A stretch of DNA of 64,000 nucleotides from Macrostomum lignano (lineage: Eukaryota), in the NCBI GenBank assembly GCA_002269645.1, contig NIVC01003265.1, positions 1 through 64,000 on the forward strand, read 5' to 3'. The translations under genes and the position numbers were made by a program. Of this stretch, positions 20,491 to 42,503 are shown piece by piece; the stretch's first letter is position 1; every line of letters begins with the position of its first letter. Under the pieces are notes generated by a model. The model was not told where the DNA came from. It saw only the letters and a program-made list of their open reading frames with translations, and made no database searches.

Positions 20491-20728
20491 AAAAAGAAAA
20501 AATCTGCGTATTCGCTAAATTTGCTTGCATCTTATCCACTGCCCCTCCAGTTTTATTTCACTGCACCCCCTGCTGGATTGTGGAGGCGGGGGCACATTTG
20601 GCTTGTGAGCGCGAATAACAAGATCTTAAACTTTTACACCGTGCTTAAAGCGAAATGTGCTGCCAGCTCCATAGGTCATCTCGAGCCCGAACTCCATGTG
20701 GCACTTATTTATACTTAATCTCTAATCC

Positions 20729-21030: not shown

Positions 21031-21534
21031 ACTATATCTGCATGTACTAATGAGGTAGAACTACTATATTGCATAATCACTGTTTAAACTGCGCACAGAA
21101 TAGCTTGCGCAAAAAAGTTCAAATTTAATTTCAATACACGACCCCATCTCTGTTTGTGATCCCTCTCTACTACATCTTTGTCTCTCCTTCTGATAGTTTA
21201 AATCAAAGCGACTTCTTTTCCAGCTTTGCATAACACTATCATAAATTAGCTACTCCAGCAATAGCATATTGTCAGGCAAGGTAACAAAAATTTATCACTT
21301 TTTTAGAATGAATGCATTGACAGCTGGCTTGGTTAGCCAACTGTCTCAGGGTTCTTATTAAATCAAGACAGGAAGCAAATACTCTCCACCCAGTTACCAC
21401 GAATAGATCGTATAGTAACAAAAACAGCTGTACTTAACTTGTTATCTCTTATAGGTTCTGAAATTCATCGCTTATAGGCTACATGCAACGGCCGTGCATT
21501 TTTAAAATACCAAGCCATAAATCTTAAACGGAAC

Positions 21535-21657
21535 GAGGGGCGCACTCAAAAAATTTTAGGGGGGGGGGGGTATTACGGAGAGAGGTGGCACTGGCAAATG
21601 GGGACAGACCCCGGAATTTTCCTCCCTTGACCCCTCCCCCTCTGGGTGCAACCCCTG
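21535..21657. mobile_element. Small MITE-like remnant
   Basis: Imperfect TIR gaggggcgcactc ... gggtgcaacccctg; no clean TSD. Confidence 0.35.
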
Positions 21658-22801: not shown

Positions 22802-22918
22802 CGAGAGAGTGAGTGAGTGAGTGAGTGAGTGAGTAAGAGAGTGAGAGTGAGAGAGTGTGTCAGTGTGGGAGTGGGTGTGAAATGAGTGAGACAGAGAGAG
22901 TGAGAGTGAGAGAGATTG
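22802..22918. repeat. (GAGT/GA)n microsatellite
   Basis: Direct reading; mirrors the (CTCA)-rich tract at ~16170-16260 in the other arm of the MULE. Confidence 0.85.
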
Positions 22919-24267: not shown

Positions 24268-24906
24268 GGCTTCTAGTCAATTCGGCGACAAGCCAATTCG
24301 GTGACAACCGATTTGGCGACAAGTCAGTTTGGCAACAGCCAATTCGGCGAATGCTAATTAAGACATTCGGTGAATCATTGCATAAAGCTACTACAAGTGG
24401 TTAAATTTTACATATGTATACGCATAGCCATTCACCCCTGACCATTTATTATAGAAAAATTGTTTTAACTATGTCAAATCGCACATTTTCAAAAAAGTTT
24501 ATAACATTTTATGCCTTCCACAGAGACATTAGGCATGGCATATGCTGGGGGGATACATGGCCATGTATACCATTTTCCCACCTGACCCAACATAATGGGC
24601 TTAAATAGTTTGATGGTTGGTTATTTAGGATTATTATTATATTTTATATTTACTATAATATACTAGGTTGGTTTGCAGCATTTGTCAAGAAAAAATTGCT
24701 ACTAAATTGCTACCAATTGCCAGCGATTTGCTGGCGGCTTTTCAAGAGAGAAATTCTTGTACTTGTATCTCAACATTTGTTTTACTGAAATATGTTTGAC
24801 ATTTAAAACCAGTAAAAAGCCTGTTGCCGAACTGACTGTCGCCAAATTGACTTGTCGCCAAATTGGCTGTCGCCGAGTTAACCTGTCGCTGAATTAACTG
24901 GTTCCC
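24268..24906. mobile_element. Non-autonomous foldback MITE with GG..CC ends and 8-bp TSD, 639 bp
   Basis: Arms consist of repeated CAATTCGGCGACA / TGTCGCCAAATTG units; TSD TTCTATGT at 24260-24267 and 24907-24914. Confidence 0.85.
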
Positions 24907-25830
24907 TTCTATGTTATCTAGATAAATTTATAGAATTTAAAGTTATGCTTTTGTTTTGATATCATATATGATATAAATTAAAAAGCAAATATAAATATGG
25001 ATTTTACTATATGAATAATGAATATTTATATTGTTTTAGCAAAAGGTATTATGACTAGTCTCAAAATAGTAGAATTTTTTGTTTTTTATATATTAATAAT
25101 ATTTAACTAAAGTTTCCTCTTACAAATGATAATTTAAATTAAAAAAAATAAGAAAATAAAACTTATGTTTTTTAATTTAGCTAGACCTATAGCTAATAAG
25201 CCATAAATCAAATCAAATATCATTTAAAAATGTGAAATAGTTTTATCTTGATTAGATCTAGTAGCTAAATAATATATTTAAGTATTTTGTTCTTTATCTT
25301 TTTATATAGACTAGATTATACTAATAAAAAGCAATAAAAAAGCAATTTGTTACTTAATAGAATAAATTAGTATTAAAACCAAAAATTTTATTCCTTTTAC
25401 CATGTGTTGATTTTCTTAGTTTTTTGTTATATTTAGAATATACATATCAATTTTTTAAAAATGTACTAGGCCATCTCATTAGTAACTAATAGGTTGATAT
25501 CAGCATAGATTAATCATATTATGACAGCTCTATAACTAAATAGCAACTTGAATTTGCATTGTCAATAGATTAAAAATGGTTAAATGATTCTAAAACTTAT
25601 ATAATGCATAGTTGTCTTCTTAAACCTAAAGCTTAATGTTCTCAATATCAGTACCACTCTTAACTTTTAGAATATATTTAGTATATTTGGCTGTATGAAC
25701 TAGTTGACCACTTGGGCATGCATATGAGGAAGCATTGGCATCCATTGTGCTTGACTATTGTCACTTTTGGTACCTGAGAATTTTCCCTTTGATACTTCAC
25801 AACACCAATGACCTTCAGGCGGCCCAGTCC

Positions 25831-28800
25831 ATGTTCGTGGTGCTGGTGCACCCCAGCCTGAAGCTGTTCGTCCGCGCCCTCAACTCCCTTGCTCGGCTGG
25901 GCGACGAGCTCTACCTGGAGTTCGACACTACCGGAGTCCTGGCCAAGACCGTCAACTCCGGCCGCTCCGCCTACGCCGAGTTCGCCTTCCAGCCCGAGTT
26001 CTTCCACCGCCACTGCCTGGCTGACGCCTCCGACCGGCCCGAGGAGTCGCTGCGCTGCAAAATTCCCGTCAAAGCCTACAGGCAGACGTTTCGGTCGCTG
26101 GGCCACATCGACCGGTCTGTGGAGCGGTGCCGCATCGAGCTGGACGGACCGGCCAGGCGGCTTACGGTGGGTGCTTCTCGCATGCAGATAACCCGGTGAA
26201 AACGATTCCTAGGCTAAGAAAGCGTCCCAGAGTCACCTGCATCGCCGCAGAGTCGTTGTAGGTAAATTTCCAAGAAGCGACTCTAAAACGACAAGATGTC
26301 ACGGTACAAGTTGCCAAAAGAGTCGCCTGAGAGCCAAGTTGAGAGGTTTGATTGCCTGCGACTCTGAAACGAATTTGGAACGACTCTGGGGCTACTTGAG
26401 CTAGTAAAACGAATTTGGAACGACTCTGGGGCTACTTGAGCTAGTAAAACGAATTTGGAACGACTCTGGGGCTACTTGAGCTAGTAAAACGAATTTGGAA
26501 CGACTCTGGGGCTACTTGAGCTAGTAAAACGAATTTGGAACGACTCTGGGGCTACTTGAGCTAGTAAAACGAATTTGGAACGACTCTGGGGCTACTTGAG
26601 CTAGTAAAACGAATTTGGAACGACTCTGGGGCTACTTGAGCTAGTAAAACGAATTTGGAACGACTCTGGGGCTACTTGAGCTAGTAGAAAGTTAACCGCT
26701 AACACAGTAAACTCTTGGACCATTTTTTATGCGACTCTTACGATTCTTCAACTCGCGTGAGGCGCTCGTGACTCAACTGTTGCCTCTCTGTCGCATTGCA
26801 GTCGTTTGAGTCACACCAGAGTCGCTAGAGTCACCAGTGAGTTGTTTGCTATGAATCTTTAGCTTTAGATTGTTGTGTCACGGTAACGTTTTCAAGGGGT
26901 AATCCGAAATTTACCACTAATCTTGTCCGGTTTTTACCCGCTTGGCTCTTTCATCCGACATTTTGCCCGGTTTCATATCCGGATTTTCGTCCGCCTCGCA
27001 ATGTATTTTTTCCTATTCGAAAAGCGGATGAAAAGTTTACAAAGCGGACGAAAAGTGCAGATTTTGACCCCTTGATCCGCTCTGCTGTTTGCAATTCGTC
27101 CGTTTTCTTCTCCGGATGTTGATCCGCATTCTTGCGGACTAGAGACCGGACCAACATTCGGACGAATTCCGGACGAATGAGACGCACACAATTCCGGACC
27201 ACTAAGCGGACCGAAATCTGGACCACTACATGCTGTGACTTCCAGCGCCCACTTATTCGAACAGCCCATGCGTATGCAGATGCATCAACCGTTTAGCATA
27301 AACTAACAAGTGTTGCAGTGAAAGAATTGAAGACTGACAAGACAGACAATGACGCATTACTTTTGTTCACACAAGAAATGATTATGTCCAGTACGTGCTG
27401 GGAACACTTTATAAAAGATGTTATGAATGCTTACGTACGTCTTTACTTTTAATGCACACTTAGACCAATAAGGCCAACAAGCGACAATGAACACAAACTA
27501 TCGAGACTGGATCGATCGATCCCTTTTGATCATTTGATCTATTCTACAAAAGAGTAGATGATGCTTCTGCTGCTTTGCTGCTAAATCGACTAAAGACAGA
27601 TGACAAATTTGTAATGAAGTTCTAATCACGATCTGGTAATTCCTACTCTGGTTGTGCAGTATCTGCATACACTGTACACGTGGTGCACTCAACAACTTCT
27701 AATTATACCCGGATCTGGTGTACTCTAGTCTGGTGCCGCAATCTCCGTATACACTAGTGTACGTAGGCGGTCCAGTGAAAAGAATGCAGAAATCAGTCTC
27801 ACTGCTGCAAAACACACAGCAGCAAATTATCTTCGAGATGACCTCCCGACTCCAATTCCTGCACTGCCGTCTGAGCCGTCATCTGCGCTGGGTGGGGTGT
27901 GGTCCGGATGGGCGGGCAATGAGCCAGAGGCAGACATAGGTGACCGAGAGCGTGTGCGAATACTATACGAATAAGCAGTCTGTCAGTACAGACAGTACAG
28001 TGGGTACAGCTGAAGACTACATTAAGTAAGACAGCAATATTAACATTTGTCCGATCTACGTCCGGAACTTTGTCCGGCGAAATCCGGCTCAATTGCGGTT
28101 GAACAGGCGGGAGACAAAGCGGATGAAATTTCCGGACAAAATATATTTTCGCCCTACTTTCATCCGGACTTAAGTCCGACTTTTCGTCCGCTCTAAGCCG
28201 GTCAAAAGTTCGGATCAAATTGCGGATGAGATCCGGATCAAAAGTAGCTTGCGAAATCCCCTTGTCCGGATTTGGCCCGGAATTTGTCCCACATTTTGGT
28301 CCGGACGTGAAATCCGGATGAAATGCGGATAAAATCCCTATTTGGTCCGGAAAGGACCCCAAAAGCGGACAAAAGCGGACGAATGGCGGACAAAATCCGG
28401 ACTAAAAAGCCAAGCGGGTATCCCACTAATGATGGCCTTGTACTAACCGCGGCCAGCTCTGCTTAACTTGGAACCCCGGCGCCTATCGCAGGTGCAATTC
28501 CAGTGCCGCATGGGCATCAGCAAGCTGCACCAGCTGTACGTGCTGGAGTGCGAGTGCCTGCAGGCGGTGGTCCCGCTGCCAACCGGCCGCTTCACCCGCC
28601 TGTCCATCCGGCCGAAGCTGCTGGCCGACCTGGTGATGCAGAATTTCCAGACCTCCCAGGAGGAGCTGACGGTGACCTGCCAGCCCCGGGCCTGCGTCAT
28701 CTGCAGCTACTGCGACAACGGCGTGCCGGCTGCCGGCTCCGTGCAGACTTCGCTCAGCCTTCGGCCGGACGAGTTTCACGAATACCGGCCGTCCGGGTCC

Positions 28801-30070
28801 AAGGGTGTCACCTTCTGCCAGCGGGAGCTCCGCTGCCTCCTCATGTTTGGCGACTGGCAGGTGCGACCTTGTCTCGTTTGCAGGATCCGCTGTTAGAACC
28901 CGCCCTCTCTATTAGAATCCGCCCTCTCTTTTAGAATCCGCCCACTCTATTAGAATCCTCCCACTCTATTAGAATCCTCCCACTCTATTAAAATCAGCCC
29001 ACTCTATAAGAATCCACCCTCTCTATAAGAATCCACCCTCTATTAGAATCCGCCTACTCTATTAGAATCCGCCCCTGTTAGTATCCGTCCCCTGTTAGAG
29101 TCCACCCCTATTAAAATCCACCTCTGATCCACCCTTAAAATCCACCCTCTATTAGGATCCGCCTCTGGTAAAATCAACCCTCTATTAGGATCCGCCCCCT
29201 CCTTATTAGAATCAGCCCCCTCCTTATTAAAATGTGCCCCCTACTTTTTAGAATCCGCCCCTCCTTATTAGAATCCGCCCCAGCACGCCGATCTCCAATG
29301 AGCCGTCGCCCCCACCAAACTCCCAGGCGCCGGCCTCGTTCCCCCTGGAGATCGAATTCGAGCGGCCCGGCCGCCCTGTCCAGTTCCACTACCGCTGCCC
29401 GGAGATGGCTTTTGAAGGCCGCTACGTGCTGTCCACCCTGGCCGAGCCTCAGTCGGCCTCCGCGACCGGCCGCAGCGCCGGGCCGATCTCGGACACCGAG
29501 TCCGAGCTGACGGCCGACCCCGGCTCCCAGCTGACCGTCACGACATCGTCCCTGACGGACGGACCTTTTAGCCGGCGGCAGCGCCACCAGCCAGCCAGCC
29601 GGAATCAGAAGCGGCCGGCCGCCGCGCTTCTGTCGCCTTCGCCGACTTCCCGAGCCTCTCAGAGCAGCAGCGGCCCCCGATCCGCGGTGCTGGAGAATCT
29701 GCCGCCACCGGCGCCGCGACAGCCTGCCGCCTTCGCCGAGGAGGAGGAGGAGGAAGATGACGAAGGCGACGAGACCATCGGCCCGGAGGACGTGGCGGCG
29801 GCGGCGGCCTCTGCGTCGTCCCGCGGAGGCCGCAAGCCGCTGCTGTCGATGCTGCAGGCCGATTCGCCAGAGCAGCAGCCGGACAGTCCGGCCAGTGACG
29901 CCCAGCAGCAGCCGCTGTGGTCGCCGCACTCGCCCGTCTTCGGCGGACCTCCGCCTGGCCGATTTGCCGACCGCCGGGCCGCCGGCGGCTGTCGCGAGCG
30001 GCAGAGGCGGCCGCCGGCTCCACTGTCGACCTCTCGAATTCTGGTGCCAGACTCGGACGGCGAGGACTGA
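25831..30070 (+). CDS. RAD9: Cell-cycle checkpoint protein RAD9 (9-1-1 clamp subunit), 482 aa, 3 exons
   Basis: Exons 25831-26166, 28492-28860 and 29327-30070, all phase 0. Motifs LARLGDELYLE, TVNSGRSAYAEF, LRCKIPVK, VTFCQRELR, FERPGRP, YVLSTL and C-terminal VPDSDGED* match human RAD9A (LSRIGDELYLE, TVNSSRSAYACF, FDAPGRP, AEDSEGEG*). Confidence 0.95.
26367..26646. repeat. 40-bp tandem repeat x7 in RAD9 intron 1
   Basis: gaatttggaa recurs every 40 bp from 26371 to 26611. Confidence 0.95.
26937..28418. mobile_element. TA-flanked non-autonomous DNA element with long TCCGGA-rich imperfect inverted arms, in RAD9 intron 1
   Basis: ta|CCCGCTTGGCT ... AGCCAAGCGGG|ta; arms at ~26937-27230 and ~28050-28418 are rich in tccgga/gcgga motifs. 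Confidence 0.7.
28893..29280. repeat. ~19-bp TATTAGAATCCGCCCTCTC minisatellite, RAD9 intron 2
   Basis: Direct reading. Confidence 0.9.
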
Positions 30071-30389
30071 CGCAGAGTTCCCGAGTCAATTTTGTAGCAT
30101 TTGAATCGCTGGCATTTCACCATAGCGGTTTTTTCTTGTCTTTTTTGGCACTTGGGTTTTGTTGGTCACTTTTTTTGTTTGCTCTCAGCTCCCTTATTCC
30201 AGCTTGCCGTCTACTTCCAGTAGTGCAGTTTTTGCGTTCGCATTTTTAAATCTTAAAATATAAAACATGGCTGAAAGTTTAAATTTGATTTTAACTTTTA
30301 CTTTTTTGTTACGCTCGCTTTGGCCTACTGGTTTGAACTGAGCTTGTTGAGGGCATGGGTTTTTAGCCAGATGCGTCACTGGGTATCAC

Positions 30390-31850
30390 GGCACCACCCC
30401 AATCACAGTGCCACCCTCCAATCACAGTGCCACCCCCAATCACAGTGCCACCCCCCAATCACAGTGCCAGCCACCCAATCACAGTGCCACCCTCCAACCA
30501 CAGTGCCACCCTCCAATCACAGTGCCACCCCCAATCACAGTGCCACCCCCCAATCACAGTGCCAGCCCCCCCCCAATCACAGTGCCACCCCCAATCACAG
30601 TGCCACCCCCCAATCACAGTGCCAGCCACCCAATCACAGTGCCACCCTCCAATCACAGTGCCACCCTCCAATCACAGTGCCACTACCCAATCACAGTGCC
30701 AGCCCCCAGTCACAGTGCCACTACCCAATCACAGTGCCACCCCCAATCACAGTGCCACCCCCAATCACAGTGCCGCCCCCAATCACAATGCCAGCCACCC
30801 AATCACAGTGCCACCCCCAATCACAGTGCCAGCCACCCAATCACAGTGCCAGCCACCCAATCACAGTGCCACCCCCAATCACAGTGCCACCCCCAATCAC
30901 AGTGCCACCCCCAATCACAGTGCCACCCCCAATCACAGTGCCACCCCCAATCACAGTGCCACCCCCCAATCACAGTGCCACCCCCCAATCACAATGCCAG
31001 CCACCCAATCACAGTGCCACCCCCAATCACAGTGCCACCCCCAATCACAGTGCCAGCCACCCAATCACAGTGCCAGCCACCCAATCACAGTGCCAGCCAC
31101 CCAATCACAGTGCCAGCCCCAATCACAGTGCTACCCTCCAATCAAAGTGCCACCCCCCCAATCACAGTGCCAGCCACCCAATCACAGTGCTACCCTCCAA
31201 TCACAATGCCACCCCCAATCACAGTGCCACCCCCAATCACAGTGCCACCCCCAATCACAGTGCCACCCCCAATCACAGTGCCACCCCCAATCACAGTGCC
31301 ACCCCCCAATCACAATGCCAGCCACCCAATCACAGTGCCACCCCCAATCACAGTGCCAGCCACCCAATCACAGTGCCAGCCACCCAATCACAGTGCCAGC
31401 CCCAATCACAGTGCTACCCTCCAATCAAAGTGCCACCCCCCCCCCAATCACAGTGCCAGCCACCCAATCACAGTGCTACCCTCCAATCACAATGCCACCC
31501 CCCCAATCACAGTGCCACCACCCAATCACAGTGCCACTACCCAATCACAGTGCCACCCCCAATCACAGTGCCAGCCACCCAATCACAGTGCCAGCCACCC
31601 AATCACAATGCCAGCCCCAATCACAGTGCTACCCTCCAATCAAAGTGCCACCCCCCCAATCACAGTGCCAGCCACCCAATCACAGTGCCACCCCCAATCA
31701 CAGTGCCAGCCACCCAATCACAATGCCAGCCACCCAATCACAGTGCCAGCCACCCAATCACAGTGCCACCACCCAATCACAGTGCCACTACCCAATCACA
31801 GTGCCAGCCCCAATCACAGTGCCAGCCCCAATCACAGTGCCAGCCCCCAA
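30390..31850. repeat. ~18-19-bp CCAATCACAGTGCCACCC minisatellite between RAD9 and RIC8
   Basis: Direct reading; it generates the spurious 480-535 aa ORFs. Confidence 0.97.
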
Positions 31851-31966
31851 TCTCGGTGCCATTCCTGTCGAATAAGCCGCAGATAGTGGCAGCTTCGCCA
31901 GGCGCCACTACTAACAGTAGCATGTAAAAAACTCGCTCTGCTGCATGTTGCAGCCCTATCGACGCC

Positions 31967-34632
31967 ATGACCAGCCAACCGCTGCAGCTGCCCCTGTCGG
32001 ATCCTCCGGCACCGGACGCTGATCCGGCCACCGTGGCCGCCGCCTTCTCGGCCTCTGAGCAGAAGCTGTCCGAATTCTCATTTAAACAGTTTAGCAATTT
32101 CCGGCCAGCCCTGGCCGAGCCGGAAGCGGACATTGGCCGGCTGTTGGCCCACCTGAGCCGGCCGGATCTGCCAACCGGCCTGGCCGTCCTCTGCCTTCGC
32201 TGCCTTCGCCTGCTGTGCCGCCATCGGCCCAACCTGGAAGCCTGCGACCCCGCCAGGTTCCTGGAGGCCGGCCTGGCCTGCCTGCTTGACCGAAGCGGCC
32301 TAGCCGACCTGGCCGATGGCGGCAAAGCTGAGCCGCAGCAGCGACCTGTCGAGGAGGTGACGGAGAGCCTGATGTGCCTGTGCAACCTCGGCATCCAGCT
32401 GGACGGCCTGGTGCAGCGGCTTGTCGACCTTCGCTGTCCAGCGGCGCTGCTCCGCCGGGCCGCCGGCCTCACCGCCGAGAGCCTCGAGCTGGACTGGCCG
32501 GCCTTCGACCTTCGCCTGCTGTTCCTGCTGGCCGCCAAGTGTCCGGCTGCCCGGCAGGACCTCCGGCTGCATCGCCGAGGCGTCGCTCAGCTCACCCAGC
32601 TGCTGCAGCTGGCCAGCGAGCCTCCGCTGCTCTCCGACAAGAGGTGCGACCTGCTTGGCGACCTGGTCAAAGTTCTCTACACACTGGCTGCCGGCACTGC
32701 GGGGCCCGGCGATAAAGACGATTCTTTGGTGAGCCACTCTTGGAGCTTTACTCACAGTCTTTGTCTCAGTCCTTGTTCTCAGTCCTTGTTCTTCGTATTT
32801 GTTCATAATGCTTGTTATTAGTCCTTTTTCTTAGTCTTTGTTCTTAGTCCTTGTTGTTAGTCGTTGTTCTTAGTCTTTATTCTTAGTCTTTGTTCTTAGT
32901 CCTTGTTCTTAGTCCTTGTTCTTAGTCTTTGTCTTAGTCTTTATCTTAATCCTTGTTGTTAGTCCTTGTTGTTAGTATTTGTTGTTAGTCCTTGTTCTTA
33001 GTCCTTGTTCTTAGTCCTTGTTCTTAGTCCTTCTTAGTCCTGCCCCTCCTTGCAATCGCTTCCAGGCCGAGGGCGAGGAGACCGCCTTCCATCAGCTGGC
33101 GGGACTGCTGCGCCGCCTCCTGCTGGCTGACTGCACCAGCCCAGACAGACGGGACCGCCTCACCCAGCACTGCGTCAGCCTGCTGCTCTGCCTGCCGCGG
33201 GACAGCTTCGACCGCCTGCTTAGCGAGGACGTCCCAGCCGCCGCTTCTTCAGCAGCGTCGACAGCGTCCAACTTTGAAGGCAAAGGCGTTGAAGCCATCG
33301 ATGTTGTGCTGAACCTGCTGGACACTCGGCTGGCTCTGTTCTCGGCCTCGTGCACCGCCGACCCGGCCGCCGTCGCTGCCGTCCTGCCGGCGGGGGTCAG
33401 CCTGACTGGCGGCGCCTTGGAGAACCTAGTGCCGGTGCTGTCCGCCCTGTTCGAGGCCTGCCGGTCTTCGCGGACCATTCGGCGATACTGCAAGCACCGG
33501 CTGCTGCCCAGGCGGAGCTCCGATCAGATGGCCCAGCTGCCCGAGGAAGGTCAGCAGGTCTCCTGATTGCTGACCCACCTGTGTGATTGATGACCCATCT
33601 GTGTGATTGCTGACCTACCTGTGTGATTGCTGACCCACCTGTGTGATTGCTGACCCACCTGTGTGATTACTGACCCACCTGTGTGATTACTGACCCACCT
33701 GTGTGATTGCTGACCCACTTTTGCGATTGCTGACCTACCTGTGTGATTACTGACCCACCTGTGTGATTACTGACCCACCTGTGTGATTGCTGATACATAT
33801 CAGATTCTTGACCTACCAGTGCAGTCTATGACCCAGTTGTCCCATCGCTAACCAAGTTCACCTTGCTAACCAATTTGCCTGGTTTATCTCTGCTCAAAAT
33901 TTGCAATAGTGAGTACTGCAGCTCCCACCATTCCCGCGCAGGCGCCTCCATGCGCAGCCGCCTGTGCCGCACGCTGACGCACCCGTGCACCCAGGCTGCC
34001 GACATGGCCGCCTCGCTGGTGCACGCGCTGTGCAAGGCCAGCATCGCCAAGGCTGTCCGCCACACCGGCTACGGCAACTTCGCCGGCTTCCTGGCCCGCC
34101 GCGGCCTTCTGGCTGCCGGTCCGTCGGCTGGGGACTCAACGGTGTACAGCTCCGACTCCTCCGGAGACGGCGAGGACGAGGACGAGGATGATGGAGCGGG
34201 GGCTGCCGATCAACAGGGCGGCGCGGCGGACGGAGACAAGGCAAACGGAGGTAGGCAGACATAGGCAGACAGACTGACAGACAGACAGACAGACATCACG
34301 AAGACAGTACGACACTAAAATGATTTCTCCCCCCGCTTACCACAGCGGCCAGCTGGTCCTACAACCCCGTCACGGGCCGCCGCGAGCCGCCCCGGCCAGA
34401 TCCCACGGCCGGCATGACCGAGGAGCAGAAAGAGTTCGAGGTGCACCGGATCATGCAAGCGATCGACCGGCTGCAGGCCACCGGCGTCATCAGCCCGGCT
34501 GTTATCGGCGAGGACGGCCGACCCTGCCCGGTGAGCCACCCGCTGGAGCTGATGGACCGCCTGGCCGAGCAGTCGGGCGGCAAGCGACGCGAGGGTGGCG
34601 GCGGGGAGGAGAGCAGCGACAGCGATGGGTAG
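31967..34632 (+). CDS. RIC8: Ric-8/synembryn G-alpha GEF/chaperone, 613 aa, 4 exons
   Basis: Exons 31967-32728, 33066-33549, 33942-34250 and 34346-34632 (phases 0, 1, 1 consistent). Motifs ESLMCLCN, FDLRLLFLL, HTGYGNFAGFLARRGL and YNPVTGR...GMTEEQKEFE match human RIC8A YTGYGNAAGLLAARGL and NPVTGR..GMTEEQKEHE. Confidence 0.95.
32820..33035. repeat. 13-bp TTAGTCCTTGTTC minisatellite, RIC8 intron 1
   Basis: Direct reading. Confidence 0.9.
33565..33795. repeat. 20-bp CTGACCCACCTGTGTGATTG minisatellite, RIC8 intron 2
   Basis: Direct reading. Confidence 0.92.
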
Positions 34633-36630
34633 AATTGAACTACTTTGTTAGCGCATGCCCTGTGCATCGAAGCAATTACCATTGGATCAGAACCTTTGAC
34701 AGCCACCATGGGGCAGAGAACCCTTGACAGCCACCGGAGCAGAACATTTGACATGCTTATATATTAGTTCAAATCTTGACTCGTTAGTTACCATTTGTTA
34801 TAATGTCTGTTGTCAGTCTATTACTGATTGATCGACATCTTGCTATCAACACAGCTTTCTCTCATATCTCTCTGCTTCATCGGTTTCAAACGCAATTTTG
34901 CACTGTAAAGAGAAAGTTTTGAGTCATTTGTGAAAATTGCAAAAGCAGTTTCGTGTCTTTCTACACTTCAGTCTGTTCTGATTACTATTATTATCTTGGA
35001 ATGCTTGTATCAAATTTTTTAAACTTTTTTTCATGAAGTTTTTGTCCTTTTTAAAGCTTCTTAGTTGTGTCATTGTTATAAAAACGATATATTAACCACT
35101 TGTTTGTCCTTGCATTACGAGTATATGACAATAAATTATTAATTTTTTTACAACTCGAATATGATTATATTTATTTATATAAATTTGTACCTCTAAAATG
35201 CTTGCATACACTTACGCCGGGTTTAAATACAAAACGATACCCCATTGTTAGCCACACTTGATATTTGTGTCGTTTCTATGATGTGAGCTACAGTTCTTTA
35301 ATTCATTTCAATAAGTTTAACATATTGTGTATGTGGACTAGCCATTGACCCCCCCACTGGGGAACTTAACTTATTGTGTATATGGACTAGCCATTGACCC
35401 CCACTGGGGAGCTTAACTTATTGTGTATATGGAATAGCCATTAAACTAGCTTATTTATTAGTGCCCTATGTGATCTAAAAGCGACATAGTTATTTTGTTT
35501 AACTTAAGAAAAATTTACATTATATTCATACATTTATCGACGACCTATTCACTACATAATTAATGCTTTGACCCTATGAGCACAGACTCAGATGTTTTTT
35601 ATTAGGTCCCTATGACCTACTCTCTACATATAATTATGACTGACTTTATGACCTATTCGCTGACCATGATCCTCCTTTAATGCATGCCGTGTTTCGGCAT
35701 GGAGGCGGCGTCACAGAGAGCGGGGGCGGAAGACGGTGGCCGCGGCAACGGCGGTCCTTGGCGCGGATTCTCCGGCGTCTTTGCCGGGTTTGCCGGTGCC
35801 GATTCGGTCGCCGGAGCCGGTTGGTCCGAAGGCGGCGGCCTGCTGCACCGCCTGCTGGGGACTCAGTGGGTGACCACCGCGGCGGCATCGAAGGCGGCGG
35901 CCGCGGCCTACGGAGGTCCGGGCGGCAACCCGGGGGCCGCAACCGGAAGTGCTCGGCCGTCTATCGCGACCTCAACGCTGTGGCGCCTTCGGGTTTCTGA
36001 TGATTGTGGTTTTTGGGCTGTCATTTCGAACTGCGAACGGGCCTTTGTCGGTTTTGGAATCGCCCTGAGCATCCACTCCTGAATCACCCTGAAGTATCAC
36101 CCTGATTAATCACCCCTGAAGAATCACCCCTTCGAATCGCCCCTGAAGACTCACCCCTGAAAAATCGCCCTTGAATTGCCCCTGCAAGAATCGCCCTGAC
36201 GAAAATTGCCCATAAGAATCGCCCTGATTTCGTCTCTGTACTAGCGAGTTGCTTGCATCTCCAGCAAAGCCTGACTACTCCGAAGTTCGGGAATCGTAGC
36301 TCATTAATTACCTTTTTATGAATTGCGTGTAACTGTACTAGTATATGCTGTTAATTAAGCCAGTTGTTTTCTTAGCGTAAAAATCTATCTTTCGATACAT
36401 ATCGGCCGTTAAGAATTTTAAAATCTCTTTAATTGTAGCATTAAATAAATAATATTGTTCCGCGGTTTCTTTCGCATAATCTCCTACAAAATTTTATTGA
36501 CGGTTACGTATGACGAGAGGTGACTCGTATAACTAATCTAAGCGTTTGGTAATAAGATACAATGCACTGCTTTTTACAGCAGAATCTAATTACTTCCTGG
36601 TTTTCAGCTCAACTTCTTGGGTTAAATTAA

Positions 36631-37315
36631 ACTGACACCAACCATAATCCCTACTGACACCAACCATAATCCCTACTGACACCAACCATAATCCCTACTG
36701 ACACCAACCATAATCCCTACTGACACCAACCATAATCCCTACTGACACCAACCATAATCCCTACTGACACCAACCATAATCCCTACTGACACCAACCAGA
36801 ATCCCTACTGACACCAACCAGAATCCCTACTGACACCAACCAGAATCCCTACTGACACCAAACAGAATCCCTACTGACACCAACCATAATCCCTACTGAC
36901 ACCAACCATAATCCCAACTGACACAAACGGGAATCCCAACTGACACAAACGGAATCCCAACTGACACAAACGGGAAGCCCAACTGACACAAACGGGAATC
37001 CCTACTGACACAAACGGGAATTCCAACTGACACAAACGGGAAGCCCAACTGACACAAACGGGAAGCCCAACTGACACAAACGGGAATCCCAACTGACAAA
37101 AAACGGAATCCCAACTGAGACAAACGGGAATCCCAACTGACACAAACGGGAAGCCCAACTGACACAAACGGGAATCCCAACTGACAAAAAACGGAATCCC
37201 AACTGAGACAAACGGGAATCCCAACTGACACAAACGGGAATCCCAACTGACACAAACGGGAATCCCAACTGACACAAACGGGAATCCCAACTGACTCAAA
37301 CGGGAATCCCGCTGA
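36631..37315. repeat. 22-bp minisatellite with two unit types (CTGACACCAACCATAATCCCTA then CTGACACAAACGGGAATCCCAA)
   Basis: Direct reading; the unit type switches near 36915. Confidence 0.95.
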
Positions 37316-37413
37316 CTCTACTATCTACAACTGCTTGTACTTCATTCACTTTGCTTACTGCTGTCAATATCTTACTAGCCAGTAGTAAATATTGCGCTTG
37401 ATCTTTTTGTTGC

Positions 37414-38643
37414 ATGCCGCGACTCGCCGCCCTGGAGCTGGTCGCTTCAGTCGCCATGGCAGCGGCCTGTTTGTCTGCGCCGGCGGCCGCCTCGGAGCCG
37501 GAGGAGGCCACGGCCAGCGCGAAGCTCCGCCTGCTGTCGCTGCCGCCCGACGATCGGACAGCGGCCGCCGGCCTTGACGCCTGCCTTCGGGCCGAGCCGC
37601 GGCTGAGCTGCGTCTGGACTCTGATGCTGGCCGGCGGAGGCGGGTTGCGCTCCCTCAGGTGCCACAACGACGGGGCGCTGAGTTGCCGGTCCGATGCAGC
37701 GCACTCGGAGCCGACTGGGTGAGTCTTACGGGCTCTACTACAGAATCTGACAGTTTCTACTACAGAATCTGACAGTTTCTACTACAGAATCTGACAGGCT
37801 CTACTACAGAATCTGACAGGCTCTACTACAGAATCTGACAGGTTCTACTACAGAATCTGACAGGTTCTACTACAGAATCTGACAGGCTCTACTACAGAAT
37901 CTGACAGTTTCTACTACAGAATCTGACAGTTTCTACTACAGAATCTGACAGTTTCTACTACAGAATCTGACAGGTTCTACTACAGATTCTGACAGGCTCT
38001 ACTACAGAATTTGACAGGCTCTACTACAGAATCTGACAGGCTCTACTACAGAATTTGACAAGCTCTACTACAGAATCACAGCACCATCGCCCATTGAATT
38101 ACCCGCAGCTCCTCAGCCTCCTGCGGCGGCTGTCCCGACTGCCTGAAACTATTCAGAGACATCAGCGGCGACAGCGGCGCCGACCTGAAAGTCGGCTGTC
38201 TGTGCTCCTGCGCCCCGGCCGAAGCCGATGACCCCCCGGCCAACCGGACCTACCCGTGCGGCGCCGACCCGGCTGGCGCCTGCGGCTCCGGACAGCAGCT
38301 GTCTGAGGAGGAGGCGCCAGCGCAGAGCAGCTACCTGCTTGTGGGCCCCCTGGCCGGCCTGGCCGTCATGGCCGCCATCGGCTTCCTGGTGCTGCGCCGA
38401 AACCACATCTGCCGGAGCACAGACCCGCCCCGCATCACCGGCCAGATTGAGTTCGCCTTTTCCGCTGAGCAACAGCAGCCTCGCCAGTCTGTGGGCTCCG
38501 ATCGGAGCGGCGGCGGCGGCGGCGGCGGGCGGAGGGAGAGCTGCACCAGGTGCGGCGCAGTGCGAGTTGAGGTCACCGGCCCGGACTCCGCTGCCGAGGA
38601 AGCGGCGCAGGAGCTGATGGAGCCGGCTGAGAAGCTGGGATGA
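37414..38643 (+). CDS. Uncharacterised type I membrane protein with Cys-rich ectodomain, 279 aa, 2 exons
   Basis: Exons 37414-37718 (donor gtgagt, phase 2) and 38109-38643 (acceptor cccgcag). Signal-like N-terminus, 12 ectodomain Cys (including SCGGCPDC and GCLCSC), an NRT sequon, TM YLLVGPLAGLAVMAAIGFLVL followed by RR, and a short cytoplasmic tail. Confidence 0.75.
37735..38077. repeat. 22-bp CTACTACAGAATCTGACAGGCT minisatellite filling the intron
   Basis: Direct reading. Confidence 0.95.
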
Positions 38644-38671
38644 ATATTTCCAAGTGTTTGCTTATTATATT

Positions 38672-39235
38672 ACTGGAGTGCCAGCCTCTGTTCTGCATCA
38701 CTCCTTCACTAGGGAACACTGGAGTGCCAGCCTCTGTTCTGCATCACTCCTTCAGTAGGGAACACTGGAGTGCCAGCCTCTGTTTTGCATCACTCCTTCA
38801 CTAGGGAACACTGGAGTGCCAGCCTCTGTTCTGCATCACTCCTTCAGTAGGGAACACTGGAGTGCCAGCCTCTGTTCTGCATCACTCCTTCACTAGGGAA
38901 CACTGGAGTGCCAGCCTCTGTTCTGCATCACTCCTTCACTAGGGAACACTGGAGTGCCAGCCTCTGTTCTGCATCACTCCTTCACTAGGGAACACTGGAG
39001 TGCCAGCCTCTGTTATGCATCACTCCTTCACTAGGGAACACTGGAGTGCCAGCCTCTGTTATGCATCACTCCTTCACTAGGGAACACTGGAGTGCCAGCC
39101 TCTGTTCTGCATCACTCCTTCACTAGGGAACACTGGAGTGCCAGCCTCTGTTCTGCATCACTCCTTCACTAGGGAACACTGGAGTGCCAGCCTCTGTTAT
39201 GCATCACTCCTTCACTAGGGAACACTGGAGTGCCG
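38672..39235. repeat. 46-bp tandem repeat, about 12 copies
   Basis: actggagtgccagcctctgttctgcatcactccttcactagggaac, period 46. Confidence 0.95.
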
Positions 39236-39625
39236 TAGCCCAAGGTCAAGCGCGGCGCTCTGATGTGCCAGCGGCCCAGGCTCGATTCCAAGTGCAGTGA
39301 CATTAATTTGGGGTCAAAATTGGAATCTCGGCTTGGCTCTGCTCGTGCAATTAACACCCTTGAAGGCCAACCCCCAAGGCACAGTGAAGTGTACATGCCT
39401 AACGATAAATAAAGTAGGGCCGCTGTACACTGTATCCTTGCGCTTGCTCAGGGGGGGGCAGTAATGCCTCTCGCCGGTTGTGAGACAATGTCGGTTAGAG
39501 TGCGCCAGGGCGCATCCAGTGTCCCCGCATTTCTCCTCAGTAGTGAGTAGCGCATGCTTTATGCCAGGTGTTGTTCTTGACAGTAAGCCGAGTCCGTATT
39601 ATCGCAGCTATATTTATTATTAATA
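39232..39625 (+). mobile_element. Probable tRNA-derived SINE
   Basis: A-box-like TAGCCCAAGG at 39236 and B-box GGCTCGATTCC at 39279; ends in a tatttattattaat tail and truncates the 46-bp array. Confidence 0.4.
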
Positions 39626-40044
39626 GATGGATAAATTCGATATGCATTTTGCTTGTAATTGATGCCACAGAACTTTAATAATATAAACTGTTTATTCAAA
39701 TCATTCTTAATGAATTTTTATTACCGCTGCTATCATATTAATGTACATACAGAACTCACTGTGCTCACCTCAGCGCGGGCTCTAGTCATACCCGGACCTT
39801 TTTTGTCACCGTTTTATCAATCTGTCCGTTGTACCGCTTCTGTCTTGTTTTATCAATTTGCGATTTTTGTTTTTACTCCCGCGATTCCTGCGCATGCGAG
39901 TCCCGTTTTAATCGAAAATTTATAAAATATATACAAGCAGCGCACACAATAGCAACCATTGCTTCACACAGACAGCTCTTCTCCCCGCATTGGCGGGCTG
40001 CAACCATTCCTATTGTCTCCGCTTACGCATTCATGGGGATTTTG

Positions 40045-41270
40045 ATTTATGAGAATCCTTGTGTGATTTATGAGAATTCTTGTGTGATTTATGAGAATTC
40101 TTGTGAGATTTATGAGAATTCTTGTGAGATTTATGAGAATTCTTGTGAGATTTATGAGAATTCTTGTGAGATTTATGAGATTCTTGTGTGGTTTATGAGA
40201 ATTCTTGTGAGATTTATGAGAATTCTTGTGAGATTTATGAGATGCTTGTGAGATTTAAGAATTCTTTTGAGATTTATGAGATGCTTGGGAGATTTATGAG
40301 AGTTCTTGTGAGATTTATGAGAATTCTTGTGAGATTTATGAGAATTCTTGTGAGATTTATGAGAATTCTTGTGAGAATTAGAAGAAATCTTGTGTGATTT
40401 ATGAGAATCCCTGTGAGAATTATGAGAGTTCTTGTGAGATTTATGAGAATTCTTGTGAGATTTATGGGAATTCTTGTATGATTTATGAGAATTCTTGTGT
40501 GATTTATGAGAATTCTTGTGAGATTTATGAGAATTCTTGTGAGATTTATGAGAATTCTTGTGTGATTTATGAGAATTCTTGTGTGATTTATGAGAATTCT
40601 TGTGAGATTTATGAGAATTATTGTGTTATTTATGAGAATTCTTGTGAGATTTATGAGAATTTTTGTGTGATTTATGAGAATTCTTGTGAGATTTATGAGA
40701 ATTCTTGTGAGATTTATGAGAATTATTGTGTGATTTATGAGAATTCTTGTGAGATTTATGAGATGATTGTGAGATTTATGAGAATTCTTGTGTGATATAT
40801 GAGAATTCTTGTGAGATTTATGAGAATTCTTGTGAGATTTATGAGAATTCTTGTGAGATTTATGAGAATCCTTGAGATTTATGAGAATTCTTGTGAGATT
40901 TATGAGAATTCTTGTGAGATTTATGAGAATTCTTGTGAGATTTATGAGAATTCTTGTGAGATTTATGAGAATCCTTGAGATTTATGAGAATTCTTGTGAG
41001 ATTTATGAGAATTCTTGTGAGATTTATGAGAATCCTTGAGATTTATGAGAATTCCTGTGTGATTTATGAGAATTCTTGTGAGATTTATGAGATGATTGTG
41101 AGATTTATGAGAATTCTTGTGTGATATATGAGAATTCTTGTGAGATTTATGAGAATTCTTGTGAGATTTATGAGAATTCTTGTGAGATTTATGAGAATTC
41201 TTGTGAGATTTATGAGAATTCTTGTGAGATTTATGAGAATCCTTGAGATTTATGAGAATTCTTGTGAGAT
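40045..41270. repeat. 21-bp GATTTATGAGAATTCTTGTGA minisatellite upstream of RPA3
   Basis: Direct reading. Confidence 0.97.
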
Positions 41271-41357
41271 TCGGAGACAGTCAAGTCTGTGGACGGATTC
41301 ACAGCATACCGCTCCTCAGCAGCCGCCCCACCCTCCAGTTGCAGCCCCCATCAGGTC

Positions 41358-42503
41358 ATGAGCGATGAGCTGTACTTCTATGACGACCGGGCAGACTCTG
41401 CGGTCACCGGCCGTCGCTGCCGCGTCAACGGCCGCCTGCTGACTGCGGGCGCCGGAACTTCCGCGGCCGGAGCTCCGGTCGTCCTCCTGGGCCGGGTGGC
41501 CTCCGCCAGCAGCGACTCGCCAACCGGCAGCCGCTGGACGGTGACCGCCTCCGACTCCGTGGAGGTTCGGGTCGCCTTCGCCAGAGGCGCCACGGCGCCT
41601 GAGGTTGCGCCCGGGCAGCTGGTGGAGATCGTGGGGCTGGTGGCGTCCGGCCCGACTGCCAGGTGCGTTCTGGGGAGTGCGGAGACCACCTTGCCTTGCC
41701 GCTCTCCCAGATCTTCGGTTGCTAGGCTACCGCCACCCTCCAGTTCCCTAGTTGCTGGGCCAGCCTCGCAGGTCCCCAGTTGCTGGGCTAGCCTCCCAGA
41801 TCCCCAGTTGCTGGGCCAGCCTCGCAGGTCCCCAGTTGCTGGGCCAGCCTCCCAGATCCCCAGTTGCTGGGCCAGCCTCCCAGATCCCCAGTTGCTGGGC
41901 TAGCCTCCCAGATCCCCAGTTGCTGGGCCAGCCTCCCAGGTCCCCAGTTGCTGGGCCAGCCTCCCAGATCCCCAGTTGCTGGGCCAGCCTCCCAGATCCC
42001 CAGTTGCTGGGCCAGCCTCCCAGATCCCCAGTTGCTGGGCCAGCCTCCCAGGTCCTCAGTTGCTGGGCCAGCCTCCCAGATCCCCAGTTGCTGGGCCAGC
42101 CTCCCAGATCCCCAGTTGCTGGGCCAGCCTCCCAGATCCCCAGTTGCTGGGCCAGCCTCCCAGATCCCCAGTTGCTGGGCCAGCCTCCCAGATCCCCAGT
42201 TGCTGGGCCAGCCTCCCAGATCCCCAGTTGCTGGGCCAGCCTCCCAGATCCCCAGTTGCTGGGCCAGCCTCCCAGATCCCCAGTTGCTGGGCCAGCCTCC
42301 CAGATCCCATAAGCCCATCTATCCTAGCTTAGCCAGTTCATCAGCCCCCGCCCGCCTCTGCCCGCAGTCCGGAGATCCGAGTCACAGAGTCGGCCACGGT
42401 GTTCTCCGACTCGCAGAGCTCCAGCTTCGACATGGACTTGTACAACTCGGCCGTCGAGATCACGGAGAGGCTGCCCCGGTGTTACTATACCCAGCAGACT
42501 TGA
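41358..42503 (+). CDS. RPA3: Replication protein A 14-kDa subunit, 146 aa, 2 exons
   Basis: Exons 41358-41662 (phase 2) and 42368-42503. RCRVNGRLL, PVVLLGRV, LVEIVGLV and FDMDLYNSAVEITERLPRCY match human RPA3 RINAGML, PVCFVGRL, IVEVVGRV and [20 protein letters not shown]. Confidence 0.9.
41745..42307. repeat. 28-bp CCCAGTTGCTGGGCCAGCCTCCCAGATC minisatellite, RPA3 intron
   Basis: Direct reading. Confidence 0.97.

What the first reader, a model, noticed from the sequence alone, without database searches (positions are those of the whole stretch)
25800..42503. Candidate SL trans-spliced operon: RAD9 - RIC8 - orphan TM gene - RPA3
Seen: four consecutive + strand genes. An unpaired-looking 3' splice acceptor lies just before the start codon of RAD9 (ccttcag, 12 nt), RIC8 (tgttgcag, 13 nt, with a perfect TACTAAC branch site at 31909-31915) and RPA3 (ccatcag, 3 nt). 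Spacers shrink to a few hundred bp once satellites are removed, for example about 430 bp between RAD9 and RIC8. Knowledge: flatworms use SL trans-splicing and some have polycistronic units; RPA-coated ssDNA directs 9-1-1 (RAD9) loading in ATR checkpoint signalling. Inference: a polycistronic unit linking two ssDNA/checkpoint factors, possibly expressed in proliferating stem cells.
Basis: partly seen in the sequence, partly recalled or inferred. Interest (0 to 1): 0.7.

Follow-up and report, generated by a model that had tools for sequence, protein, structure and literature searches.

The report
Known-type flatworm spliced-leader gene cluster
This is a head-to-tail run of five trans-spliced genes in the flatworm Macrostomum lignano, an ordinary example of the spliced-leader operons already catalogued for this species; whether one promoter drives them all is still unproven.

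Summary
The window is bases 1-64000 of Macrostomum lignano scaffold NIVC01003265.1 (assembly Mlig_3_7).

- There are five + strand units, not four: RAD9, RIC8, a GC-rich small-ORF unit, an orphan TM protein and an RPA3-like protein.
- RIC8 and the RPA3-like gene have tandem acceptors.
- The TM gene is trans-spliced too.

Trans-splicing is well supported. The GenBank 5'-partial CDSs begin at these acceptors. At three junctions, some of the three genomic copies carry the last 3-6 nt of the spliced leader (TGCATG) where another copy has, or is inferred to have, CAG. I read this as a footprint of SL-bearing RNA-seq reads, because the assembly was polished with RNA-seq.

The spacers, measured from stop codon to acceptor, shrink to 412-928 nt once satellites are removed. 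That meets the published operon criterion of under 1 kb. Only the small-ORF unit and TM share a published transcriptional unit, so a single five-gene polycistron is plausible but not shown (about 0.35-0.4).

The RAD9-RPA3 functional link is weak. This RPA3-like protein scores only 30 bits against Pfam and 37-39 bits against human RPA3. The published neoblast RPA3 genes score 81-82 and 53-56 bits, so they appear to be a different gene.

Verdict: a known kind of system, low novelty.

The parts
23642..25818 (+). AT-rich (28% GC) sequence upstream of RAD9, shared by all three genomic copies. Candidate promoter plus outron of the first gene.
   Evidence: GC content. No GTRAG donor-like site in 2.2 kb. 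Bounded on the left by a copy-specific MULE insertion. The promoter role is inferred.
25813..25818 (+). RAD9 trans-splice acceptor CTTCAG; junction 25818|25819.
   Evidence: Matches YTNCAG. GenBank CDS Mlig006463.g1-g3 (partial, AAQSMFVV...) starts at the next base in all three copies. The SL AUG would be in frame, giving MAAQS-MFVV.
25831..30070 (+). RAD9 CDS. Exons 25831-26166, 28492-28860 and 29327-30070.
   Evidence: Pfam Rad9 1.6e-49 over the full domain. The exact protein is in GenBank as PAA52304.1. GC3 is 0.86.
30257..30264 (+). AATATAAA, the only poly(A)-signal-like hexamers after the RAD9 stop.
   Evidence: The role as 3' end signal is inferred.
30397..31861 (+). 18-mer satellite (77 copies) that fills the RAD9-RIC8 spacer.
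31909..31915 (+). TACTAAC branch-point-like heptamer, 32-38 nt upstream of the first RIC8 junction. Identical in all three copies.
31942..31953 (+). RIC8 tandem acceptors. TGCATG (31942-31947) replaces the CATCAG seen in copy L005; it is followed by TTGCAG (31948-31953).
   Evidence: L005 reads gccatcag|ttgcag|ccc; the window and L004 read gcTGCATG|ttgcag|ccc. Annotated CDS starts in the three copies imply transcript 5' ends at about 31948, 31954 and 31959-31961. The SL AUG is out of frame at both junctions.
31967..34632 (+). RIC8 (synembryn) CDS. Exons 31967-32728, 33066-33549, 33942-34250 and 34346-34632.
   Evidence: Pfam Ric8 1.2e-68. 100% identical to PAA52305.1, Mlig018804.g2.
35130..35135 (+). 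AATAAA after RIC8.
   Evidence: Inferred 3' end signal.
35681..35686 (+). TGCATG immediately before the annotated 5' end of the small-ORF unit. The inferred original acceptor is CTCCAG.
   Evidence: The window and L004 read aaTGCATG|CCG; L005 reads aactcATG|CCG. A single original, aactCCAG, explains both if its last 6 or 3 nt were overwritten with the SL 3' end.
35684..36082 (+). GC-rich small ORF: 131-132 aa here, 103/104 aa in the other copies. Coding status is doubtful.
   Evidence: Annotated in all three copies. No Pfam hit. No GC3 excess in any frame. The frame differs between copies.
36630..37310 (+). 22-mer satellite between the small ORF and TM.
37410..37416 (+). TTGCATG before TM. The other two copies read TTGCCAG, a real acceptor with no genomic ATG. 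Junction 37416|37417.
   Evidence: GenBank TM CDSs (Mlig006945.g2, Mlig007567.g3, partial) start at CCG = PRLAALEL.
37414..38643 (+). Orphan single-pass TM protein CDS. Exons 37414-37718 and 38109-38643. Not annotated on this scaffold.
   Evidence: GC3 of 0.83 is coding-like. Only self-hits among 1.84e9 representatives.
38672..39234 (+). 46-mer satellite directly after the TM stop.
39408..39413 (+). AATAAA after TM.
   Evidence: Inferred 3' end signal.
40044..41271 (+). 21-mer satellite. Each unit carries a donor-like cttGTGAGA.
   Evidence: The TM-RPA3 spacer that holds it is 2.7 kb here, 3.7 kb in the 61-kb scaffold copy and 8.2 kb in the 910-kb scaffold copy.
41333..41354 (+). Three tandem acceptors before the RPA3-like gene: CTCCAG| (41338), TTGCAG| (41344) and CATCAG| (41354).
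   Evidence: GenBank partial CDSs (CSPHQV...) imply a 5' end at 41339. Only the third junction puts the SL AUG in frame.
41358..42503 (+). RPA3-like CDS. Exons 41358-41662 and 42368-42503.
   Evidence: Pfam Rep_fac-A_3 30 bits. 26-27% identity and 37-39 bits to human RPA3. PAA52307.1, Mlig033759.g1.

Best explanation
This is a head-to-tail cluster of five spliced-leader trans-spliced units of Macrostomum lignano. In order they are RAD9, RIC8, a GC-rich small-ORF unit, an orphan TM protein and an RPA3-like protein.

Each 5' end is made by joining the 35-nt SL (...TTGCATG) to a CAG acceptor a few bases before the ORF.
- For RAD9, the small-ORF unit and TM, the SL's terminal AUG is in frame. For TM it is the only AUG in the two unaltered copies.
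- For RIC8, and for the two upstream RPA3 acceptors, the SL AUG is out of frame.

The cluster meets the published operational definition of an M. lignano SL operon: same strand, nothing on the other strand in between, downstream genes trans-spliced, and repeat-adjusted spacers under 1 kb. The most likely mechanism is transcription from the AT-rich region upstream of RAD9 through at least part of the cluster, with 3' end formation and SL trans-splicing cutting out the individual mRNAs.

Shown: the gene identities, the acceptors, the public 5' boundaries, the SL-like overwriting at three junctions, and one transcriptional-unit prefix shared by the small-ORF unit and TM.
Inferred: the promoter position, the poly(A) sites, and co-transcription of RAD9-RIC8 and of TM-RPA3.

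I put about 0.65 on a trans-spliced cluster that is at least partly polycistronic, and about 0.35-0.4 on one five-gene polycistron.
For: Organism and locus:
- 100% identity to GCA_002269645.1 NIVC01003265.1.

Genes:
-.

Acceptors and chance estimate:
-.

Public 5'-partial CDSs begin at the acceptors:
- RAD9 in all three copies.
- RIC8.
- TM and the small-ORF unit.
- RPA3-like.
- In that annotation, 5' ends of trans-spliced genes were set from SL-read peaks (PMC5730564).

SL footprint:
- At three junctions the copies differ only in the last 3 or 6 nt before the junction, and the variant equals the SL's last 3 or 6 nt.
- The assembly was polished with Pilon using RNA-seq as well as DNA reads (PMC5730564).
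- Difference clusters are otherwise spread over the locus. About 0.2 of the 75 would be expected within 6 nt of a junction; 4 are observed.

Spacers from stop codon to acceptor, minus tandem repeats:
- 412, 928, 653 and 904 nt, against the published 1 kb threshold (PMC8629364).

Absence of cis donors:
- No GTRAG donor upstream of the RAD9, RIC8 or TM acceptors.

Direct hint of polycistrony:
- The small-ORF unit and TM share a transcriptional-unit prefix in two copies: Mlig006945 g1/g2 and Mlig007567 g2/g3.

Conserved arrangement:
- Same gene order and strand in all three copies.
Against: - No RNA reads could be examined here.
- The public transcript assembly splits the cluster into four TU clusters in every copy. 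The authors do note that TUs break in repeats.
- Raw spacers are 1.05-2.7 kb here and up to 8.2 kb in another copy. They contain AT-rich unique sequence that could hold promoters.
- Predicted poly(A)-to-acceptor distances are about 200-680 nt, longer than the roughly 100 nt mode reported for operons.
- About 40 donor-like GTGAGA sites in the satellite upstream of RPA3 would compete with trans-splicing if that satellite is transcribed.
- About 60% of trans-spliced genes in this species are not in operons (PMC8629364).
Confidence: 0.65

Rival explanations
1. Five separately transcribed genes that merely lie head to tail. Each has its own promoter in the spacer, and SL trans-splicing only trims each gene's own outron (monocistronic trans-spliced genes).
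For: - Most trans-spliced M. lignano genes are not in operons (PMC8629364).
- RAD9, RIC8, small-ORF+TM and RPA3 fall in four different TU clusters in all three copies.
- Raw spacers of 1-2.7 kb (8.2 kb in another copy) contain 34-46% GC unique sequence.
- Donor-like sites in the satellite upstream of RPA3 argue against read-through there.
Against: - All four repeat-adjusted spacers are under the 1 kb threshold that separates the two modes of TS-TS distances.
- The small-ORF unit and TM do share one TU.
- Only 67 nt of unique sequence lie between the satellite and the RPA3 acceptors, little room for a conventional promoter.
Confidence: 0.3
2. The acceptors are ordinary cis acceptors that join unannotated 5' UTR exons, for example a donor near 30381, so there is no trans-splicing.
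For: Cannot be excluded from DNA alone. There is one GTGAGC at 35283 and many GTGAGA in the 21-mer satellite.
Against: - The public annotation ends the transcripts at the acceptors and marks the CDSs 5'-partial.
- SL-suffix overwriting at three junctions requires SL-bearing RNA.
- No GTRAG donor lies anywhere in the 2.2 kb before RAD9, the 1.9 kb before RIC8 or the 1.3 kb before TM.
- GTATCA at 30381 does not fit the species' GT[G/A]AG donor motif.
Confidence: 0.03

Closest known systems
Macrostomum lignano SL trans-spliced operons (Wudarski et al. 2017, PMC5730564; Ustyantsev & Berezikov 2021, PMC8629364)
   Same: - Same species and the same single 35-nt SL ending in ATG.
- YTNCAG-type acceptors just upstream of the ORFs.
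- Same-strand neighbours whose spacers are swollen by satellites and fall below 1 kb once repeats are subtracted.
- Conserved genes (RAD9, RIC8) mixed with lineage-specific ones.
   Different: - Five units would be a large operon; 93% of predicted operons have 2-3 genes.
- Predicted intercistronic distances of 200-680 nt are longer than the roughly 100 nt mode.
- The published TUs join only two of the five units.
Caenorhabditis elegans SL2-type operons
   Same: A polycistronic pre-mRNA resolved by 3' end formation coupled to SL trans-splicing. Operon genes are often functionally unrelated.
   Different: - M. lignano has one SL and no SL2-like specialised leader (PMC8629364; PMC12582326).
- Spacers here are 10-25 times longer in raw length and are full of satellites.
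Schistosoma/flatworm SL with a 3'-terminal AUG used as initiator (Cheng, Cohen, Ndegwa & Davis 2006, J Biol Chem 281:733; cited in PMC12582326)
   Same: - The SL ends in ...TTGCATG.
- For TM (two copies), and in frame for RAD9, the SL AUG is the likely initiator.
- The copy of the RPA3-like gene on the 61-kb scaffold (L002/L005) has TTG in place of ATG. It can only be translated in frame from an SL AUG joined at CATCAG|.
   Different: Use of the SL AUG at this locus is inferred from reading frames only and was not measured.

Membership tests
M. lignano SL operon (operational definition of PMC8629364) | Immediately adjacent genes on the same strand, not interrupted by an opposite-strand transcript | tested here: met
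   All annotated genes from 25819 to 42503 are on the + strand, in the same order in three copies.
M. lignano SL operon (operational definition of PMC8629364) | Downstream genes are SL trans-spliced | tested here: met
   This evidence is indirect.
- 5'-partial GenBank CDSs start at AG acceptors.
- An SL-suffix footprint is seen at the RIC8, small-ORF and TM junctions.
- For the RPA3-like gene only the annotated boundary after CTCCAG| supports it.
- No reads were inspected.
M. lignano SL operon (operational definition of PMC8629364) | Repeat-adjusted intergenic distance below 1 kb | tested here: met
   412, 928, 653 and 904 nt from stop codon to acceptor after subtracting TRF arrays only. The distances are shorter if 3' UTRs are excluded.
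SL operon in the strict sense | One promoter and a polycistronic precursor spanning all members | not testable with these tools
   There is only partial support: the small-ORF unit and TM share a TU prefix. The other neighbours lie in separate TU clusters.
C. elegans-type operon | Specialised downstream leader (SL2) and intercistronic spacing of about 100 nt | tested here: not met
   A single SL is known in this species (PMC8629364). Raw spacers here are 1.05-2.7 kb.
RAD9 (9-1-1 clamp subunit) | Full-length Rad9 domain | tested here: met
   PF04139 at 1.6e-49, covering profile positions 1-253 of 253.
RIC8/synembryn | Full-length Ric8 domain | tested here: met
   PF10165 at 1.2e-68, covering profile positions 1-447 of 447.
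RPA3 (RPA 14 kDa subunit) | Rep_fac-A_3 OB fold with C-terminal trimerisation helix, and orthology to RPA3 | tested here: inconclusive
   - PF08661 at 30 bits, above the 23.5 cut-off.
- Alignment to human RPA3 runs end to end, including FD.xLYN.AV, but scores only 37-39 bits.
- Published neoblast RPA3 genes of this species score 81-82 (Pfam) and 53-56 (human) bits, so this is probably a divergent paralogue.
- The AlphaFold model was unusable, with pLDDT 30.

The most novel reading that the evidence does not exclude
The TGCATG sequences at 31942-31947, 35681-35686 and 37410-37416 could be real genomic alleles rather than polishing errors. In that case cDNA of SL-trans-spliced mRNA recombined back into the gene. 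That would erase the acceptor and write the leader's AUG into the genome, turning a trans-spliced gene (TM on this copy) into one that carries its own start codon.
Probability: 0.05. Interest if true: 0.6.

Novelty: already known. Interest (0 to 1): 0.17.

Why it matters
As an operon it adds little. SL trans-splicing, repeat-swollen operons and the SL-donated AUG are all published for this species, and these genes are already in GenBank with their trans-splice boundaries. If the cluster were shown to be one polycistron, it would be a larger-than-usual M. lignano operon and a convenient test case for transcription through kilobases of satellite.

The practical point is the by-product. In Mlig_3_7, RNA-seq polishing seems to have overwritten the last 3-6 nt of some trans-splice acceptors with the leader's 3' end. 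That destroys the AG and creates false genomic ATGs, and it can mislead gene modelling and motif statistics for trans-splice sites.

Tried and rejected
All hits that could be reached come from the NCBI genome or UniRef, with no transcript assemblies.
- Rfam and tRNA scans of the window found nothing, so there is no SL RNA gene here.
- Searches of papers and supplements for the locus tags gave nothing. The one relevant table is cut after a fraction of its rows, so the absence of RAD9 and RIC8 from it says nothing.
- I first mapped the table's three TRANSSPLICED, neoblast-stringent RPA3 rows onto this locus. I then rejected that mapping because their Pfam and human-RPA3 scores do not match this protein. 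Transcript-length comparison between copies did not help.
- I first read the TGCATG before the small ORF and TM as chance, or as a read-parsing artefact of a short SL suffix. Comparing the three copies replaced that reading with overwriting by RNA-seq polishing. Two other TGCATG sites, ending at 44015 and 45589, are identical in all copies and uninformative.
- Reading the gene-number suffix (.g1.g2) as position within a TU was only partly right. Prefixes are clusters of 95%-identical TUs across copies.
- Structure prediction of the RPA3-like protein failed, with pLDDT 30.
- Sequence divergence between copies is too low and too even (about 2%) to reveal constrained spacer elements.


Full report
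**Where the window comes from.**
The RPA3-like and RIC8 proteins match Macrostomum lignano proteins at 99-100%. All unique segments between 24000 and 45617 are 100% identical to locus L003. L003 is bases 21961-44632 of scaffold NIVC01003265.1 in GCA_002269645.1, assembly Mlig_3_7. Window coordinates therefore equal scaffold coordinates. Two further copies of the region exist in the same assembly, on a 910-kb scaffold (loci L001/L004) and a 61-kb scaffold (L002/L005). They are about 98% identical to the window. This fits the partly duplicated genome described for the DV1 line (PMC8629364).

**Checking the observation.**
The four genes are real.
- RAD9 has 3 exons, from 25831 to 30070 (Pfam Rad9 1.6e-49).
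- RIC8 has 4 exons, from 31967 to 34632 (Pfam Ric8 1.2e-68).
- The TM protein has 2 exons, from 37414 to 38643. It has no Pfam hit and no relative among 1.84 billion representative proteins.
- The RPA3-like protein has 2 exons, from 41358 to 42503 (Rep_fac-A_3, 30 bits).

My RAD9, RIC8 and RPA3 models reproduce the GenBank proteins exactly, apart from their 5' extensions. RAD9, RIC8, TM and RPA3 all show the strong third-position GC excess of coding sequence, 0.83-0.86.

The species' published trans-acceptor motif YTNCAG occurs at 0.25% of positions in this window. Having one within 20 nt of all three conserved start codons has p of about 1e-4.

First, the public annotation has a fifth + strand unit between RIC8 and TM, a GC-rich ORF at 35684-36082. 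It has no codon-position signal, and its reading frame differs between copies: 131 aa against 103/104 aa. I doubt that it codes for a protein.

Second, RIC8 and RPA3 have tandem acceptors.
- RIC8: (CATCAG|)TTGCAG|.
- RPA3: CTCCAG|TTGCAG|CCCCCATCAG|.

The annotated 5' ends favour the upstream ones.

Third, the 21-mer satellite just before RPA3 carries about 40 donor-like cttGTGAGA sites. That acceptor is therefore not strictly unpaired-looking. These sites do lack the G at position -1 that all seven real donors of the locus have.

**Evidence for trans-splicing.**
The literature supplies the framework.
- M. lignano has one 35-nt SL, CGGTCTCTTACTGCGAAGACTCAATTTATTGCATG.
- 30% of its genes are trans-spliced and 15% are assigned to operons.
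- Spacers are inflated by repeats, and a repeat-adjusted distance below 1 kb is the working operon criterion (PMC8629364).
- In the Mlig_3_7 annotation, 5' ends of trans-spliced genes were set from peaks of SL-containing reads (PMC5730564).

Against that background, the GenBank RAD9 CDS (Mlig006463.g1-g3, all marked partial) begins at 25819. That is the base after CTTCAG, and it holds in all three copies. The RIC8 CDSs (Mlig018804.g1-g3, partial) begin within a few bases of the tandem acceptors. TM (partial) begins at CCG, directly after the junction. The RPA3-like CDS (two copies partial, CSPHQV...) begins one base after CTCCAG|.

**A second, unplanned line of evidence.**
At three junctions the copies differ only in the last 3 or 6 nt before the junction. 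In each case the variant equals the last 3 or 6 nt of the SL.

| Junction | Copy or copies with an acceptor | Copy or copies with the SL suffix |
|---|---|---|
| RIC8 | L005: gcCATCAG\|TTGCAG | window, L004: gcTGCATG\|TTGCAG |
| TM | L004, L005: ttgcCAG\|CCG | window: ttgcATG\|CCG |
| small ORF | none observed | L005: aactcATG\|CCG; window, L004: aaTGCATG\|CCG |

For the small ORF, both observed variants follow from one original, aactCCAG|CCG. That inferred acceptor also fits YTNCAG.

The assembly was polished with Pilon using Illumina DNA and RNA-seq reads mapped by STAR (PMC5730564). The simplest explanation is that reads carrying a few SL bases at their 5' end were aligned across the junction and outvoted the DNA reads. 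Clustered differences between copies are otherwise scattered: 75 clusters in 22.5 kb of alignment. About 0.2 would be expected within 6 nt of a junction, and 4 are seen.

Whatever produced them, these footprints require SL-bearing RNA joined at 31948, 35687 and 37417.

**Reading frames relative to the SL AUG.**
- The SL AUG is in frame for RAD9 (MAAQS-MFVV), for the small ORF and for TM. In the two unaltered copies it is TM's only AUG.
- It is out of frame at both RIC8 junctions and at the first two RPA3 junctions.

The 61-kb copy of the RPA3-like gene has TTG instead of ATG. That copy can be translated in frame only from an SL AUG joined at this third acceptor; otherwise it is a dead copy. 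Use of the flatworm SL AUG as initiator is established for Schistosoma (Cheng et al. 2006, cited in PMC12582326). It is also noted as likely for Macrostomum (PMC10468722). At this locus it is inference.

**Is it one operon?**
Arguments in favour:
- All annotated genes from 25.8 to 42.5 kb are on the + strand, in the same order in three copies.
- Stop-to-acceptor spacers minus tandem repeats are 412, 928, 653 and 904 nt. With the only plausible poly(A) signals (30257, 35130, 36444, 39408), the intercistronic distances are about 200, 400, 270 and 680 nt.
- No GT[G/A]AG donor lies in the 2.2 kb before RAD9, the 1.9 kb before RIC8 or the 1.3 kb before TM.
- The small-ORF unit and TM carry the same transcriptional-unit prefix in two copies. 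That means RNA-seq assembly joined them across a 680-nt satellite.

Arguments against:
- RAD9 (Mlig006463), RIC8 (Mlig018804), small-ORF/TM (Mlig006945, Mlig007567) and RPA3-like (Mlig013693, Mlig033759) are separate TU clusters in every copy. The authors warn that TUs break in repeats.
- Raw spacers are 1.05-2.7 kb here, and the TM-RPA3 spacer is 8.2 kb on the 910-kb scaffold.
- The spacers contain AT-rich unique sequence.
- The donor-like satellite upstream of RPA3 should interfere with trans-splicing if it is transcribed.

By the published operational rule the five units would be called one operon. True co-transcription is shown for none of the pairs here, and hinted at for one. I put about 0.65 on a trans-spliced cluster that is at least partly polycistronic, about 0.35-0.4 on one five-gene precursor, and about 0.3 on five independent promoters.

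**The functional story.**
RAD9 and RIC8 are clear orthologues. The last gene is only RPA3-like. It aligns to human RPA3 over the whole fold, including the C-terminal helix, but at 26-27% identity and 37-39 bits. Its Pfam score is 30 bits.

The published neoblast table lists three trans-spliced, neoblast-stringent RPA3 genes: Mlig033707.g1/.g3 and Mlig014066.g1. Their Pfam scores are 81-82 bits and their human-RPA3 scores are 53.5-55.8 bits. None of the three copies of this locus reproduces those numbers. The canonical RPA3 of the species is therefore probably elsewhere, and its stem-cell expression cannot be transferred to this gene. The table is truncated, so it says nothing about RAD9 or RIC8.

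The idea of an operon that couples RPA to 9-1-1 loading therefore rests on a weak identification and on no expression data. Operons in this species, as in nematodes, commonly mix unrelated conserved genes.

**Surroundings.**
Upstream lie minus-strand exons of an ABC transporter (1800-6395) and a rhodopsin-type receptor (9440-10549). A + strand Cys-rich 105-aa gene sits near 13.7-14.0 kb. An 8.07-kb MULE transposon (15572-23641) is absent from the 61-kb copy. RAD9 is thus the first conserved + strand gene after a 2.2-kb AT-rich stretch shared by all copies. That stretch is the natural candidate for the promoter and outron (inferred).

**Verdict.**
It is an instance of a system already described and catalogued for this species, and the genes and their trans-splice boundaries are already public. 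Interest is low. The most useful by-product is the evidence that RNA-seq polishing has rewritten some trans-splice acceptors in the reference assembly.

Noticed in passing
window 31942-31947, 35681-35686, 37414-37415 (compare L004 and L005): In Mlig_3_7 the 3-6 nt before some trans-splice junctions read as the SL 3' end (TGCATG or ATG), while another genomic copy has, or is inferred to have, CAG. The assembly was Pilon-polished with RNA-seq, so these are probably reference errors that erase acceptors and create false ATGs.
   Followed up: yes
window 41358-42503 versus the published Mlig033707/Mlig014066: This species seems to have a second, more canonical RPA3 (Pfam 81-82 bits, 53-56 bits to human) that is neoblast-enriched. 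The gene in this window is a divergent RPA3-like paralogue (30 and 37-39 bits).
   Followed up: partly
L002:10019-10021 / L005 about 20596 (equivalent to window 41358-41360): The 61-kb copy of the RPA3-like gene has TTG in place of the start ATG, with the ORF otherwise intact. The same allele appears in a UniProt model from the older ML2 assembly.
   Followed up: partly
window 15572-23641: An 8.07-kb MULE DNA transposon with 45-nt terminal inverted repeats and a 619-aa transposase ORF with a PHD finger (18177-20036). The 61-kb copy shows the empty site.
   Followed up: yes
window 26935-28420 (RAD9 intron 1): A 1.5-kb element bounded by 23-nt inverted repeats (TACCCGCTTGGCT...), rich in CCGGA/TCCGG motifs. 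Probably a non-autonomous DNA transposon.
   Followed up: no
window 40044-41271: Each unit of the 21-mer satellite carries a donor-like GTGAGA. The TM-RPA3 spacer that holds this array is 2.7 kb, 3.7 kb and 8.2 kb in the three copies.
   Followed up: partly
window 35684-36082: This annotated small ORF is GC-rich but has no third-position GC excess in any frame. Its frame is shifted between copies by a 1-nt indel in a G run. It may be a non-coding trans-spliced exon.
   Followed up: partly
window about 13.7-14.0 kb (L005:875-1192): A + strand gene for a 105-aa Cys-rich repeat protein (CxC/CKC motifs, metallothionein-like). It lies 3.7 kb upstream of RAD9 in the transposon-free copy.
   Followed up: no
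window 1800-6395 (-) and 9440-10549 (-): Minus-strand exons of an ABC transporter (ABC_tran, ABC2_membrane_3) and a rhodopsin-family receptor.
   Followed up: no
L001:17205 (window about 47629): The next annotated + strand gene (678 aa) begins with CGGTCTC, the first 7 nt of the SL. This may be chance or a boundary artefact.
   Followed up: no
window 1-64000: About 30 distinct satellite arrays (periods 4-114 nt, up to 1.6 kb) fill introns and spacers. Nearly every intron of the five genes contains one.
   Followed up: no
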